A stretch of DNA of 63,752 bases, counting the filler, from Octopus bimaculoides (lineage: Eukaryota): NCBI RefSeq assembly GCF_001194135.2. It is 7 parts of 4 records of this genome, joined end to end, with 100 filler letters (N's around TTAATTAATTAA, not from the genome) between each part and the next. Parts side by side here need not be neighbours in the genome. Positions count along the whole stretch, not along the records: positions 35,254 to 40,694 come from NC_068986.1; 6 more parts are not named here. One strand, given 5' to 3'. The notes below the pieces were generated by a model. The model did no database searches, was not told the origin of the DNA, and saw only the letters and a list, made by a program, of their open reading frames with translations. Shown here piece by piece: positions 35,126 to 40,794 of this stretch (its first letter is position 1; each line of letters starts with the position of its first letter). Made by a program: the position numbers and the translations under genes.

Positions 35126-35363
35126 CAAACACAAACACACACACACACACACANNNNNNNNNNNNNNNNNNNNNNNNNNNNNNNNNNNNNNNNNNNNTTA
35201 ATTAATTAANNNNNNNNNNNNNNNNNNNNNNNNNNNNNNNNNNNNNNNNNNNNATATATATATATATATATATATATACACGAGTGAGTGGACAAGCGAA
35301 AACAAAGGGCACTTAACACATTTAGTAGGTGTTACATGTATTATCTAAAACAGTTTGATTCGG

Positions 35364-35490
35364 TTCCGTGTTACTTCTAGTTTCGCAGGTCCCTAACGGG
35401 AGCCCGACTCCTTCAGGCTTCTCGTCTTTCCAGAAGCCTGAAGGTGTCGGGTTCCCGTTAGGGGGCTGCGAAACTTGAAGTAGCATGGAA
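35364..35490. repeat. GC-rich hairpin, about 59-bp stem and 9-nt loop
   Basis: tacttctagtttcgcag...caggcttct / agaagcctg...ctgcgaaacttgaagta with few mismatches and several G-T pairs. Confidence 0.9.
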
Positions 35491-35540
35491 TCACGTGCTA
35501 CTGGAGATTTCTTTTCCTTCTGTGGACTTTTCCCTTTCTC

Positions 35541-35575
35541 CTTTCCGACGAAGAACTATGCTCGAAACGTCAAAA
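35541..35575 (+). ncRNA. Degenerate minimal hammerhead-like motif
   Basis: cttt-CCGACGA-a-GAAC-tat-GCTC-GAAA-C-GTC-aaaa. Confidence 0.45.
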
Positions 35576-35663
35576 CTTTCTCTTTTCAACCTAATACATT
35601 TCTTGTATACGTCCTCTTCTTGTCCGTTAATTTTATTCGTTTATTTGAATTGTGTGCGCGCGT

Positions 35664-35706
<43 letters not shown>

Positions 35707-36359
35707 TTATATAATATTATATATTACCTTCTTCATTGTGGCGTCGTAGGACTCAATTCCTTCATTACCCTGTAGTATATTCAATACGATGGCTATGGTG
35801 CTATTGTATTCATAAAATAAAGCTACGTTCGACATCTGGAGATGAGAAAAATAGTTGTGACGTTGGCAATGGCCCGTGGAAATAACATGTAATCGATAAG
35901 TAAGAATAGCATGCAAGATCTTTATAGTTATATGCAAACATTTCACACAAAAATTGGATATATATATACACACATATAAATATACCTATACATGCATACA
36001 TGTATGTATGTATGTATGTATGTATGTATGTATGTTTGTATGTAGAGAAGGCGCCTGACTTAGTGGTTAGGATATTCGGCTCACTATCGTAAGGTCATGA
36101 GTTCGGTTCCCGGTGATGCTTTGTGTCCTTCAACATGATACTTTATTTCACGCTACTCCAGTGCGCTCAGCTGGCAAAAAATTAGTTGCACCGGTAATTC
36201 AAAGGGCCAGCCTTAACACATTCTGTGTCATGTTGAGTCTCCCTATATGAAGGGTACAAGTGTTTGTGGAGTGCTCAGTCACTTGCACGGGAATTTCACG
36301 AGCAGGCTGTTGCGTTGCCCGGATCAACTGGAGTGCCAGTATACACCTTCTATTTTTTA

Positions 36360-37025
36360 ATTATTATAAATATTCCACTGAGGAGGGAGCCGGTTTCCAA
36401 CAAAGCTACAAGACCCCATCTTTGGGATGTAGTTAACACAGACAAATTCGCATTTGGAACTTGAGAAAAGTCTTACATATTTTTACTGTTCCACTCACAG
36501 ATTGCATTTGTAATGTACGAATTAGTCAGTCGATTTCGCTTTCTGAAAATCCCAGTTTATCCAGATTCTTCTTTAAAGCATTTACTAACAAAACCTAGTA
36601 CTCTAATTATTATTGGTATGAATATGAATTCATAGTCTGGATATAGAAGCTGGAGGTTTTGAAGCAGATGTCCATAGTTTTCCTCTCTTTCTTTGATTTT
36701 CAAAGAGATATTTATATCTGCAGGGCACCTGACCTCTATGACGGTACATACTTTTGCCCATCTGTCCCAAACAACAATATCCGGCCTGTCATGTTTATAT
36801 TTGACAGACGTTTTGATGGGAATATTCCACCTGTATTCTTTGAGTTGGTGTTTATGAATGCATTCCATAGCAGAAGGATTTTCTAGGTTTATTTCAGGAC
36901 AGTCTTTTTTGCAGATGGCATTGTAAACTGTTATAGGAACAACATCGTGCCGCATAGGGAGGTAGTACCGTGACGACATTTTAGGACAGCTGCTAATCAC
37001 ATGTGTGACGTCGTCCACAGAAACA
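36360..37025 (-). mobile_element. R4/Dong-type non-LTR retrotransposon 3' end (zinc knuckle + restriction-like endonuclease)
   Basis: HVISSCPKM...RHD, RPDIVVWD...IEVRCP (PD-(D/E)xK), KEREENY, IPIIIRVLG, then a 3' UTR ending in ataataat. Confidence 0.85.
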
Positions 37026-37716
37026 TAACATGTGTGTATGTATGTATGTATGTATGTATGAATGTATGTATGTATGTATGTATGTATATGACGAGAGATA
37101 ATGAACGGGAAACTGGCATGTTTTATACATTCAGTCGAATTCTTATAAAAAGATAATTTCCTGATGTATTCTGACTTCTATAATATACTGCTTTTTGATG
37201 ATTCAACCCCAATATGATACAGTATATGCGATGAGGGGGAATTTTAAAAATTTTAATTGTCAAAATTCTATCCCTGATATTCGCCAAAGTCTTTTATATG
37301 CCCACATCTCAAAGACTTCTAATCTACTTGGCAATACAGTTGTTAATGTGAAGGAGGCGAGCTGGCAGAATCGTTAGCACGACCAATAAAACGCTTAGCA
37401 GCACTACGTCCGTCTTTACGTTCTGAGTTCAAATTCCCCCGAGGTCTACTTTGCTTAATATTCCTTCAGGCTTGCCCCCACCACGAGATTACTGGCCTTG
37501 CCCCCAAAATTGAAACTAATATAGTTGTTAATGCCTTTATCTTAACTCCATGCAGTAAAGTAAACCACACACGCAACACTTTGCTATTTTTCCGGTTTCG
37601 ATATTGATATTTCTTGATGCTAGCATGTTTGACATTCTTTCGAATGGTTTCCTGATTACCTTAACCTACCACAGACTTTTGCTTTCTGACTATTAAACAT
37701 CCATTATGCAGCGAAT

Positions 37717-38099
37717 GTGGAGGCGCAATGGCCCAGTGGTTAGGGCAGCGGACTCGTGGTCATAGGATCGCGGTTTCGAATCCCAGACCGGGCATTGTGA
37801 GTGTTTATTGAGCAAAAACACGTAAAGCTCCACGAGGCTCCGGCAGGAGATGGTGGCGAACCCTGCTGTACTCTTCCACCACAACTATCTCTCACTCTTA
37901 CTTCCTGTTTCTGTTGTGCTTGTAATTCAAAGGGTCAGCCTTGTCACACTGTGTCACGCTGAATATCCCCGAGAACTACATTAAGGGTACACGTGTCTGT
38001 GGAGTGCTCAGCCACTTGAACGTTAATTTCACGAGCAGGCTGTTCCGTTGATCGGATCATCTGGAACCCTCGATGTCGTAAGCGACGGAGTGCCAACAA
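37717..38099 (+). mobile_element. Full-length tRNA-headed SINE family B
   Basis: A-box tggcccagtggtt, B-box ggtttcgaatccc, tail ...gcgacggagtgccaacaa. Related copies sharing the tail at 13750-14040 (-), 34440-34645 (-), 36045-36335 (+) and 50780-51103 (+). Confidence 0.85.
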
Positions 38100-39443
38100 T
38101 GCAGTGAATAAATTGTTTTAACCGATTTTTAGCTGGAAATTCCTCAATAAATGGTATTGGAAATGTTTGAAGGAATGCACCTGCTTCGAATTCTTATTCA
38201 AACTAGCAAAAGACTTTAACAGAACAATAATTTCCGAGAGACGAAAATTATGCTTTCTTCAACCAAATGGTTGTATGACTGACGAATTCATGCTTATAAT
38301 TTTTTACATTGTCCAGCTATTTTTGGAATATTCTTCCAGATTCTCAAACTGTTCCGCTACCACCACCCTGGTGTGGTCTTTTACATCGTTGTCGGAAGGA
38401 TAAAAGGTAAATCAGTCTTTCATCATCCCTGCAGGAACTCTTAAGAATAAATGTGCGCCTGTGGGGGTGTATATGGGTGTATATGCTTGTGTGTGTGTGT
38501 GTGTGCGTTTGTCTGTGTTTGTGTGTGTGTATGTGCGTGTGTAAGTGTGTGTGTATGTACGTAAGTATGTATGCGTGTATGTATACATAAGTACATGTAT
38601 GTATATGTTTATATGTATGTAATATATCGATAAATGTGTAGCGCATCAAATTAAAATATCTAAGATAATGCTGATAGTCCAAACAATCTCTGTTTTAATT
38701 AATTTACTGGGGAGTAGGCTAATCTAAGAGATTACAGGATAATTAGAGGATCAGCTACGATCTGTAGAGCTACAAACACATATTTCCTTCTTAAATGTTT
38801 TTTCTTCTTAAATCCTTTCTCGAATTTGTCTGTTGAACATTAACAGGTGATTGACGTGTGATTAACAGGTTCGCACCGCGATCAGGTGGCTCTCGATCCA
38901 TCCTGCTTTTTCGTATATTGGACAAAGTCTCTTCTAAGAAAGTCTCAGTCAAGTCTTGTGAGGGATTTTCGGTTGATGGAAAGTCCTTAGTCAACTGTAA
39001 GTTAGAATGGACGATGCTTGGCTTTGTGCGAGAGACTAAATTTATCACTTGATTTAACATCACTGCTACCTGGCCCTCAGTTGCTTTCAACGGACTGCAC
39101 TTTGTTGCAAGCATGTTAGCCATCTCTCCAGTTTGCATATAACATTATACCACCCTTCTCACAGTTTCTAAGGGCCCTAAAAGTTACGAGTGCAAAGATA
39201 TGGTAACACCAGTGTTATCCATGTGTAAGAGCCCAATGCTAACCAATTGATGCTGTGGCTTGCTGTCAATAGATTCATCTAAAGGTCCTAGCACATTACT
39301 TTGTTAAGGGACAGACAATGATGTTAATATGACCCTACATAAGTGCCGCTCTTCTTCCTATTATTAACCAAGGGTTAAAAACAAAATGTCAGTACTTTTG
39401 TATATGCAAGTGCATTTGCCAAATGATAAATATTCATACTTAC

Positions 39444-39623
39444 AATATTGCTGTACGCACCGGACAGAGAGCTATTTTCTGACCAGTTCTTCAATGCTGC
39501 ATTCAATTCAGCCAAGAAGTATTCCATCGACTTTATTAATTTCGGAATTAGCGAAAACATATTGTCAACTTTTAACAAATCCAGCGAGCTCAAAACTACA
39601 TTCTCTTCGAATATATCTCTGCA
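39444..39623 (-). CDS. Putative internal exon of an antisense gene, Dbl-homology (RhoGEF)-like
   Basis: Minus-strand ttccctctccctatatttctag acceptor and gtaagtatg donor. Exactly 180 nt, open in phase 0: CRDIFEENVVLSSLDLLKVDNMFSLIPKLIKSMEYFLAELNAALKNWSENSSLSGAYSNI. The domain call is by-eye only. Confidence 0.55.
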
Positions 39624-39795
39624 CTAGAAATATAGGGAGAGGGAATACAAGTGATTGTACTACCAACGTCATATAAAAATATATGGTACGAGATCATAAT
39701 ATAAGGTGTAAGGTATTGCCAGAGAAGCGTGACTAGGGAATGGAGACTTCACATGGGTGCACAAAGTGTGGGGGTGGGAAATGCAGTGACTGGTG

Positions 39796-39826
<31 letters not shown>

Positions 39827-40317
39827 AAAGAGGTGAGGATCGAAATCCTTCGAAGGGATGTCAAACACCAAGTCTACCGGTACAATCCGAGCAGTCTTGT
39901 TTTAAATAGACACGACTCCTAGAATAATCACACATTATAAATTAGTAAGAGCACAATACCCATGTAATTCTAAAGTTAACGTTTTTCTTTATTAAGTTCT
40001 CGTTTTTTCTTGTACTACTGACGAGTACTCTTTGACAACTCAGATTCTTAAAATGAATTTATTGTCTTTCTGTACGAAACGATCGTCTAGCGAAGTGAAT
40101 AAATAGTTCATCCCATATTAACATCTAATCTCCACCAATAATGAAAAATATCATTGAATTTTTCGAACATCGTTCTATAACTAAAGTCATATACATAATA
40201 TATTTATATAACTTTTCATATCTACGCCATTTTACAGCAGTAAATCCAAAATAAAATATGAAGAATCAACGTTAGAAAACTTTTGGAAATTACTCCAATT
40301 AGAGAACGAAACCTCGT

Positions 40318-40616
40318 TTTCTACTATAACCTCGGGCCGACCAAAGCCTTGGGAGTGGATTTGGTAGACGGAAACTGAAAGAAGCCCGTCGTATATATGT
40401 ATATATGTGTGTTTGTGTGTCTGTGTTTATCCCCCCCCCCAACATCGCTTGACAACAGATGCTGGTGTGTTTACGTTCCCGTAACTTAGCGGTTCGGCAA
40501 AAGGGACTGATAGAATAAGTACTAGGCTTGTAAAGAATAAGTCATGAGGTTGATTTGTTCGACTAAAGGCGGTGCTCCAGCATGGCTGCAGTCAAATGAC
40601 TGAAACAAGTGAAAGA
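40318..40616 (+). mobile_element. SINE family A, 5'-truncated
   Basis: ctactataacctcgggccgacc...tail. Further A copies at about 11510-11690 (-), 47925-48100 (-), 50228-50650 (+) and 53950-54113 (+). Confidence 0.8.
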
Positions 40617-40794
40617 ACGTATATATATCTACGTATATATATGCAAACTTACACACACGCACACACACACGCACACTCACACACACACACACACNNNNNN
40701 NNNNNNNNNNNNNNNNNNNNNNNNNNNNNNNNNNNNNNTTAATTAATTAANNNNNNNNNNNNNNNNNNNNNNNNNNNNNNNNNNNNNNNNNNNN

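What the first reader, a model, noticed from the sequence alone, without database searches (positions are those of the whole stretch)
39444..39623. Candidate hidden antisense RhoGEF-like gene nested in the contactin locus
Seen: a 180-nt, phase 0/0, fully open minus-strand segment with textbook splice sites, in unique sequence 1.4 kb upstream of a contactin exon that starts mid-Ig3, hence inside a contactin intron. The peptide pattern F..I..L......FL.EL...L..W.....L...Y..I resembles the central helices of Dbl-homology domains (typical FSNIEEI..FH..FL.EL...L..W....IG.IF). Inference: an exon of a divergent RhoGEF-like gene antisense to an axon-adhesion gene. If its upstream exons lie beyond 41 kb, the two genes are interleaved.
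Basis: partly seen in the sequence, partly recalled or inferred. Interest (0 to 1): 0.75.

Follow-up and report, generated by a model that had tools for sequence, protein, structure and literature searches.

The report
Known octopus RhoGEF-like gene exon
The segment is a real, expressed coding exon of an octopus gene with a divergent RhoGEF (DH) domain, but the gene is already annotated and is not hidden inside or antisense to a contactin gene.

Summary
Window 39444-39623 (minus strand) is an open 180-nt, phase 0/0 segment with a good acceptor and a GTAAGT donor. RNA contigs from two octopus species end exactly at both junctions and splice on to a second exon in the piece (35835-35728).

The DH guess also holds, though the exon alone hits nothing in Pfam. 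An exhaustive search found the full protein, Octopus bimaculoides LOC106883920 (XP_014790546.1, 297 aa; the exon encodes residues 120-179). It passes Pfam RhoGEF PF00621 at 34 bits against a cut-off of 27.6.

Two claims fail:
- The gene is not "hidden". RefSeq annotates it, and UniProt calls it "DH domain-containing protein".
- It is not shown to be nested in contactin. That context came from joining unrelated pieces. In the 54-kb genomic locus no gene is called on the opposite strand.

The same-strand neighbour is a RhoGAP gene that NCBI names "breakpoint cluster region protein", and its first exon carries the missing half of this gene's PH domain. The best reading is therefore one fast-evolving, octopod-restricted BCR/ABR-like gene (DH-PH-C2-RhoGAP) split into two gene models. 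This is ordinary and already known; the split annotation is a minor new point.

The parts
39444..39623 (-). Third coding exon of LOC106883920 (180 nt, phase 0/0). It encodes residues 120-179 of XP_014790546.1 / XP_014790543.1, in the N-terminal to central part of the DH domain (the CR2-like F..I..L..FL.EL motif).
   Evidence: Translation. RNA contigs bounded exactly here in two species. 100% match to P0001 residues 120-179. Maps to L001 21744-21923.
39624..39625 (-). Acceptor AG of the exon (CT on the + strand), preceded by a pyrimidine tract (CCCTCTCCCTATATTTCT).
   Evidence: The RNA contig departs from the genome here, with loose end ...DLAEMRRLLS| equal to P0001 residues 110-119.
39442..39443 (-). 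Donor GT of the exon (GTAAGT on the minus strand).
   Evidence: The RNA contigs jump from 39444 to 35835.
35836..39443 (-). Intron of 3,608 nt between coding exons 3 and 4. It holds microsatellites, SINE-like repeats and a 153-aa repeat-associated ORF.
   Evidence: Junction from RNA contigs. Repeat content.
35728..35835 (-). Fourth coding exon (108 nt, phase 0/0): MSNVALFYEYNSTIAIVLNILQGNEGIESYDATMKK, residues 180-215. Acceptor TCTCCAG|ATG, donor AAGAAG|GTAATA.
   Evidence: In organism C it is spliced on to GTG ATG CCA GAT ATT GAG ACT CCA TTT = VMPDIETPF, the annotated continuation.
39626..40694 (-). 3' part of the roughly 8.6-kb intron upstream of the exon. The previous coding exon lies outside the piece, at about L001 12905-13084.
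   Evidence: The upstream loose-end sequence is absent from the window. Exon map on L001.
35254..35727 (-). 5' part of the next intron. The following exon (MPNIETPF) is at about L001 29903, outside the piece. This stretch contains a 59-nt-arm hairpin repeat.

Best explanation
The segment is the third coding exon of the annotated Octopus bimaculoides gene LOC106883920. Together with the next exon in the piece (35835-35728), it encodes the N-terminal to central helices of a highly divergent Dbl-homology (RhoGEF) domain, residues about 93-278 of a 297-342 aa product.

The gene is most likely the N-terminal half of a single octopod-restricted, fast-evolving BCR/ABR-like gene with the order DH - PH - C2 - RhoGAP. 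Current annotation splits it into LOC106883920 and the adjacent 'breakpoint cluster region protein' gene.

Shown: the exon, its splicing, its expression in two species, DH-family membership of the whole protein, and the domain order along one strand.

Inferred: that one transcript spans both halves, and the function. I take the DH-PH unit to dock on Rho-family GTPases or membranes as part of a Rho-signalling regulator or scaffold. As in human BCR, the DH domain may well be a weak or inactive 'pseudo-GEF'. My estimate is about 0.5 for pseudo-GEF and about 0.35 for active GEF.
For: Exon and splicing:
- RNA contigs end at 39444/39623 and join 35835.
- The upstream loose end DLAEMRRLLS equals residues 110-119 of the annotated protein.

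Identity:
- Exhaustive phmmer of the exon against 1.84 billion representatives gave two hits. P0001 (100% identity, residues 120-179) is XP_014790546.1 / A0A0L8I769 'DH domain-containing protein'. P0002 is a partial Argonauta hians protein, 65% identical, with LSSLDLLKVDNMFSL invariant.
- The piece is 100% identical to L001 26113-20673, inside the gene.

DH membership:
- PF00621 scores 34 bits against the 27.6 gathering score.
- The best solved-structure match is the human BCR DH domain, over residues 93-262.

BCR/ABR-like single gene:
- The downstream same-strand neighbour carries RhoGAP, and NCBI names it 'breakpoint cluster region protein'.
- The O. vulgaris model P0006 runs from the end of the DH domain through a PH domain into a C2-like domain.
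- P0006 residues 112-158, the last PH strands and helix, map to the first exon of the neighbour gene at L001 51876-52016.
- That exon has an acceptor, and its frame stays open and conserved (EASLAL) upstream of RefSeq's start Met.
- The PH part best matches the BCR PH domain 5oc7.
- Human BCR DH-PH has no detectable GEF activity (PMC5727386).
Against: - RefSeq models in both O. bimaculoides and O. sinensis stop at about the same place with their own stop codons (TIESTVI*, TIESKDEMTTHQF*). Short DH-only products may therefore be real isoforms.
- I could not read any transcript that spans both halves in O. bimaculoides.
- The matches to BCR's DH and PH domains are weak (E 0.14 and 0.04).
- Short-range conservation shows little purifying selection. 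Against organism B there are 8 nonsynonymous and 4 synonymous changes over the 288 nt of the two exons, and exon divergence is 4.2% against about 5.1% in the intron.
- The structure model was too poor to confirm the fold.
Confidence: 0.85

Rival explanations
1. LOC106883920 is, as annotated, an independent small gene. It makes a 297-342 aa protein with a DH domain and a truncated PH-like tail, separate from the neighbouring RhoGAP gene. The adjacency reflects an ancient split or an internal promoter and terminator in a former BCR/ABR-like gene.
For: - RefSeq pipelines split the models at the same point in two species, each with its own stop codon.
- The isoform X1 model extends about 1.5 kb past the TIES exon to L001 44133.
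- The RNA graph of run X1 branches after exon 4, showing that alternative forms exist.
Against: - The PH domain would be cut in two. The first strands would sit in this gene and the last strands plus the C-terminal helix in the neighbour, and neither half should fold alone.
- The O. vulgaris model bridges the gap.
- The neighbour's first exon has an acceptor and a conserved open frame upstream of its assigned Met.
- Organism C transcripts of 2.43-2.47 kb run about 1.9 kb beyond exon 3, much more than the short product needs.
Confidence: 0.12
2. One reading: an unannotated ('hidden') RhoGEF-like gene lying antisense within an intron of a contactin gene, with the two genes interleaved.
For: Only the DH-like nature and the strand of the exon support it.
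Against: - The gene is annotated in RefSeq and UniProt.
- In CM046606.1:95,017,977-95,072,109 the only called genes are this one and a RhoGAP gene, both on the same strand.
- The contactin exon lay in another, unrelated piece of the joined window.
- No plus-strand RNA was seen over 38640-39800 in three deep RNA runs.
Confidence: 0.02
3. The open frame is a chance ORF in a non-coding or pseudogenic spliced transcript.
For: - Open frames of this length are common in the piece.
- dN/dS against a close species is high, about 0.5-0.75 on very few sites.
- The exon alone has no Pfam or PDB hit.
Against: - The frame stays open across at least 8 exons to give a protein that passes PF00621.
- It is conserved at 65% identity with an invariant 15-residue core in Argonauta.
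- It remains open, with the same junctions, in organisms B and C.
Confidence: 0.01

Closest known systems
Human BCR / ABR (DH-PH-C2-RhoGAP Rho-family regulators)
   Same: - The domains follow the same order along one strand: DH, PH, C2-like and RhoGAP.
- The best solved-structure matches of both the DH and PH parts are BCR (5n7e, 5oc7).
- The PH domain carries a long internal loop.
- NCBI names the C-terminal half 'breakpoint cluster region protein' or 'ABR-like'.
- Human BCR's DH is itself a divergent 'pseudo-GEF' (PMC5727386).
   Different: - Similarity is very weak (E 0.14 and 0.04), and relatives were found only in octopods.
- It has a short acidic N-terminus instead of BCR's coiled-coil and kinase region.
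- A Glu (E101) sits where BCR has S509 in CR1.
- The canonical GAP arginine-finger position is V or I.
- The gene is annotated as two genes.
- Orthology against paralogy was not tested.
Canonical Dbl-family RhoGEFs (Pfam PF00621, e.g. Dbs, Tiam1, intersectin)
   Same: The whole protein passes the Pfam gathering score. It has recognisable CR1-like (LRKIILEKIL), CR2-like (MFSLIPKLIKSMEYFLAEL) and CR3-like (LLHCPIIAHYRVYFGLKELCKYT) segments, followed by a PH-like region.
   Different: - The score is only 34 bits and begins at profile position 32.
- The O. sinensis orthologue falls just under the cut-off (26.9).
- From my knowledge of the family, the TE..Y of CR1 and the QR of CR3 are replaced (MNGNV, IA).
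- Activity is untested.

Membership tests
Dbl-homology RhoGEF domain (Pfam PF00621) | Whole-protein score at or above Pfam's gathering score (27.6 bits) | tested here: met
   P0001 scores 34.0 bits (E 4.3e-8) and P0003 33.7 bits. The O. sinensis orthologue P0005 scores 26.9 bits, just below the cut-off. The 60-aa exon alone and the 106-aa three-exon peptide give no hit.
Dbl-homology RhoGEF domain (Pfam PF00621) | All-helical bundle of about 180-200 aa (DH fold) | tested here: inconclusive
   The AlphaFold2 model of P0003 has mean pLDDT 39.7. DSSP gives helices over residues 85-248 followed by strands, but Foldseek matches are meaningless.
Dbl-homology RhoGEF domain (Pfam PF00621) | PH domain directly C-terminal to the DH domain | tested here: inconclusive
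   PH-type Pfam models hit residues 292-334 at E 0.003-0.02, below their cut-offs. The BCR PH domain 5oc7 matches at E 0.04. The second half of the PH domain lies in the neighbouring gene model.
Dbl-homology RhoGEF domain (Pfam PF00621) | Catalytic residues (CR1 Glu, CR3 Lys; PMC5727386) and measurable nucleotide-exchange activity | not testable with these tools
   By alignment to BCR, E101 sits at the CR1 position and lysines are present in GLKELCKYT, but the QR of CR3 is IA. Activity needs a biochemical assay.
BCR/ABR subfamily | DH-PH-C2-RhoGAP in that order in one gene product | tested here: inconclusive
   The order is met along one strand of the locus. The O. vulgaris model joins DH-end, PH and C2, and P0008 joins C2 and GAP.
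BCR/ABR subfamily | Catalytic arginine finger in the RhoGAP domain (GIYRVSG) | tested here: not met
   In the alignment to ARHGAP15 (3byi) the finger position is V in O. sinensis (FIYVMRG) and I in O. bimaculoides (FIYIMRG). An Arg lies two residues further on.
BCR/ABR subfamily | Orthology to BCR/ABR by phylogeny with other molluscan and vertebrate members | not tested
Only NCBI's similarity-based names support it.
Nested antisense gene pair (gene within an intron of a contactin gene) | A host gene on the opposite strand whose exons flank the locus | tested here: not met
   No opposite-strand gene is called within the gene plus 10 kb on each side. The contactin exon came from another piece of the joined window.

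The most novel reading that the evidence does not exclude
An octopod-restricted, rapidly evolving BCR/ABR-like paralogue in which both enzymatic modules have drifted: the DH domain lacks the CR3 QR motif, and the RhoGAP arginine-finger position is V or I. It would then be a double pseudo-enzyme scaffold for Rho signalling, strongly expressed in one tissue sample, and currently mis-annotated as two genes in at least two octopus genomes.
Probability: 0.3. Interest if true: 0.35.

Novelty: already known. Interest (0 to 1): 0.15.

Why it matters
The finding is a correct call of an exon and of its protein family from raw sequence, but the gene is already in RefSeq and UniProt, so nothing new is discovered at this level.

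The modest added value is an annotation correction. The DH gene and its RhoGAP neighbour look like one BCR/ABR-like gene.

The family is also restricted to octopods and evolves unusually fast for a Rho regulator. That could interest people studying lineage-specific signalling genes in cephalopods.

Tried and rejected
- Pfam on the 60-aa exon and on the 106-aa three-exon peptide gave no family, even at E<=10. A PDB sequence search with the 106 aa gave nothing.
- The word-indexed protein search with the exon gave no candidate, although the protein is in the collection. The exhaustive search was needed.
- The genome-contig scan covers only bacteria and archaea, so it was irrelevant and a wasted call.
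Transcripts joining the two gene halves therefore could not be examined.
- Three deep raw RNA runs (X4-X6, about 6% sampled) had no reads on 38640-39800. This is uninformative beyond showing low expression there.
- The AlphaFold2 model from a 6-sequence alignment had pLDDT 39.7, and its Foldseek matches (TREM2, BAR-PH and others, all E>=0.1) are meaningless.
- The loose-end consensus after exon 4 in X1 reads as VVATVVTWF*, but it is a mosaic of two unrelated contigs (agreement 0.68), so I did not interpret it.
- A literature search for LOC106883920 found no papers.

Full report
**Observation.** The minus strand of window 39444-39623 is open for 60 codons (CRDIFEENVVLSSLDLLKVDNMFSLIPKLIKSMEYFLAELNAALKNWSENSSLSGAYSNI). 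A pyrimidine-rich acceptor precedes it (CCCTCTCCCTATATTTCTAG|TGC) and a GTAAGT donor follows it (AATATT|GTAAGTATG).

On sequence alone this is not compelling. The 5.4-kb piece (39% G+C) holds 11 stop-free stretches of 82 or more codons, against 2.7 in shuffles, many from microsatellites. It also holds six AG...GT-bounded phase-0 segments of 150 nt or more.

**RNA evidence.** Transcript data decide the question.
- A 910-nt contig from RNA run X1 (same species label as the window, depth 281) lies on the minus strand on exactly 39444-39624 and departs from the genome on both sides.
- Its downstream loose end is identical to window 35807-35836. Laid there, the same contig covers 35835-35726.
- The exon is therefore spliced across a 3,608-nt intron to a second 108-nt, phase 0/0 exon at 35835-35728. 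That exon reads MSNVALFYEYNSTIAIVLNILQGNEGIESYDATMKK, with acceptor TCTCCAG| and donor |GTAATA.
- Four RNA runs from three studies of a third species (organism C) have contigs of up to 2,430 and 2,466 nt with the same junctions. They continue after the second exon with GTG ATG CCA GAT ATT GAG ACT CCA TTT, which is VMPDIETPF.
- Three deep raw RNA runs of the window's species had no reads here, and only X1 among the indexed RNA runs of that species holds the exon. Expression therefore looks tissue-restricted.
- The exon sits in single-copy DNA.

**Identity.** The exon alone, and the 106-aa peptide from three exons, hit nothing in Pfam or the PDB. The word-indexed protein search also failed.

The exhaustive phmmer search of 1.84 billion representatives found exactly two proteins:
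- P0001 is 297 aa and 100% identical over residues 120-179. It also contains the upstream loose-end peptide DLAEMRRLLS and the second exon.
- P0002 is a partial Argonauta hians protein, 65% identical, with LSSLDLLKVDNMFSL invariant.

P0001 is XP_014790546.1, 'uncharacterized protein LOC106883920 isoform X3 [Octopus bimaculoides]', which is UniProt A0A0L8I769 'DH domain-containing protein'. Isoform X1 (P0003, 342 aa) is XP_014790543.1 / A0A0L8I665.

The gene lies at CM046606.1:95,017,977-95,072,109 of GCA_001194135.2 (locus L001, gene 10001-44133). The window piece is 100% identical to L001 26113-20673. The finding is the third coding exon, at L001 21744-21923. The gene is therefore annotated, not hidden.

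**Family.** The full proteins pass Pfam RhoGEF PF00621: P0001 at E 4.3e-8 and 34.0 bits against a gathering score of 27.6, with residues 132-266 matching profile positions 32-172 of 180. P0003 scores 33.7 bits. The O. sinensis orthologue P0005 (88% identical) scores 26.9 bits, just under the cut-off.

The best solved-structure match is the DH domain of human BCR (5n7e, E 0.14) over residues 93-262.

A structure prediction from the shallow 6-sequence alignment was too poor to use (pLDDT 39.7), and its Foldseek matches are meaningless.

**Context.** The claim of nesting, antisense, in a contactin intron rests on sequence outside this piece and is an artefact of the joined window. In the real locus only two genes are called within the gene plus 10 kb on each side, both on this strand.

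The second gene starts 7.8 kb downstream, and its 362-aa product hits RhoGAP PF00620. NCBI calls it 'breakpoint cluster region protein isoform X2' (P0007), and its O. sinensis counterpart 'active breakpoint cluster region-related protein-like' (P0008).

Several results tie the two gene models together:
- The O. vulgaris model P0006 starts at the end of the DH domain (MRKHSCFVPP). It runs through a PH domain with a long loop and into a C2-like domain (C2_SYDE, E 0.0018).
- P0006 residues 112-158, the last PH strands and the C-terminal helix, map to L001 51876-52016. That is the first exon of the 'BCR' neighbour.
- That exon has an acceptor (TCTAG|), and its frame is open and conserved (EASLAL) upstream of RefSeq's start Met.
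- The preceding TIES exon of LOC106883920 ends at a GTAAGT donor.
- The PH part best matches the BCR PH domain (5oc7, E 0.04).

The PH domain is thus cut between two gene models. The economical reading is one BCR/ABR-like gene (DH-PH-C2-RhoGAP) split by annotation, perhaps with real short isoforms as well.

**Evolution and likely function.** Relatives were found only in octopods.

Against the DNA contigs of organism B:

| Region | Changes | Breakdown |
|---|---|---|
| Exon at 39444-39623 | 8 in 180 nt | 6 nonsynonymous, 2 synonymous |
| Exon at 35728-35835 | 4 in 108 nt | 2 nonsynonymous, 2 synonymous |
| Both exons | 4.2% divergence | about 5.1% in the flanking intron |

This gives dN/dS of roughly 0.5 on very few sites, with the frame intact. 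At greater depth (Argonauta) the core of the exon is strongly conserved. This is a fast-evolving but coding sequence.

By alignment, a Glu (E101) occupies the CR1 position where BCR has S509, and lysines remain in the CR3-like GLKELCKYT. From my knowledge of the family, the CR3 QR is replaced by IA. Human BCR DH-PH has no detectable GEF activity and was termed a pseudo-GEF (PMC5727386). In the GAP half, the canonical arginine-finger position is V or I.

I therefore favour a Rho-signalling regulator or scaffold whose DH domain may be weakly active or inactive. This is inference.

**Verdict.** The finding is a real exon with the protein family correctly named, but the gene is already annotated, and both the 'hidden' claim and the antisense/contactin framing are wrong. 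It is of low interest, apart from a probable split-gene annotation error and an unusually divergent BCR/ABR-like gene in octopods.

Noticed in passing
L001 42580-42648 and 51876-52016 (outside the window; same chromosome, same strand): The PH domain is divided between two RefSeq gene models, LOC106883920 and the neighbouring 'breakpoint cluster region protein' gene. The neighbour's first exon has an acceptor site and a conserved open frame upstream of its assigned start Met. This is probably one gene split by annotation, in both O. bimaculoides and O. sinensis.
   Followed up: partly
P0007 / P0008 (products of the neighbouring RhoGAP gene): At the canonical RhoGAP arginine-finger position (GIYRVSG) these proteins have I or V (FIYIMRG / FIYVMRG), with an Arg two residues later. 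The GAP domain may be catalytically impaired.
   Followed up: partly
window 35726 (minus strand, after the exon at 35835-35728): In RNA run X1 the assembly graph branches into two unrelated continuations after this exon (contigs of 145 and 56 nt, agreement 0.68). The printed consensus does not match the annotated next exon (VMPNIETPF). This suggests at least one unannotated alternative splice form in that sample.
   Followed up: no
window 35364-35490: A long hairpin-forming inverted repeat in the intron: 59-nt arms, 88% complementary, 9-nt loop. It could be a foldback or MITE-like element, or a hairpin RNA precursor.
   Followed up: no
window 36557-37018 (minus strand): A 153-aa ORF (…RHDVVPITVYNAICKK…PDIVVWDR…IEVRCPADINI…) flanked by (TATG)n microsatellites. 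Pfam gives only a weak HSDR_N_2 hit (E 0.05). From memory it resembles the C-terminal tail of a retrotransposon ORF.
   Followed up: partly
window 37714-38099, 36185-36332 and 40316-40616: SINE-like dispersed repeats. The 37714-38099 element has at least 7 further copies at 87-93% identity within the 54-kb locus, and a partial copy at 36185-36332. ARAGORN finds no intact tRNA in the piece.
   Followed up: partly
window 38794-39138 (minus strand, in the intron): A 115-aa ORF on the gene's strand with a sub-threshold Pfam PP2C hit (E 0.0011, 19.2 bits against a 20.3 cut-off). Part of it (39069-39146) is multi-copy in DNA runs. It is not in any annotated isoform and no RNA contig covers it.
   Followed up: partly
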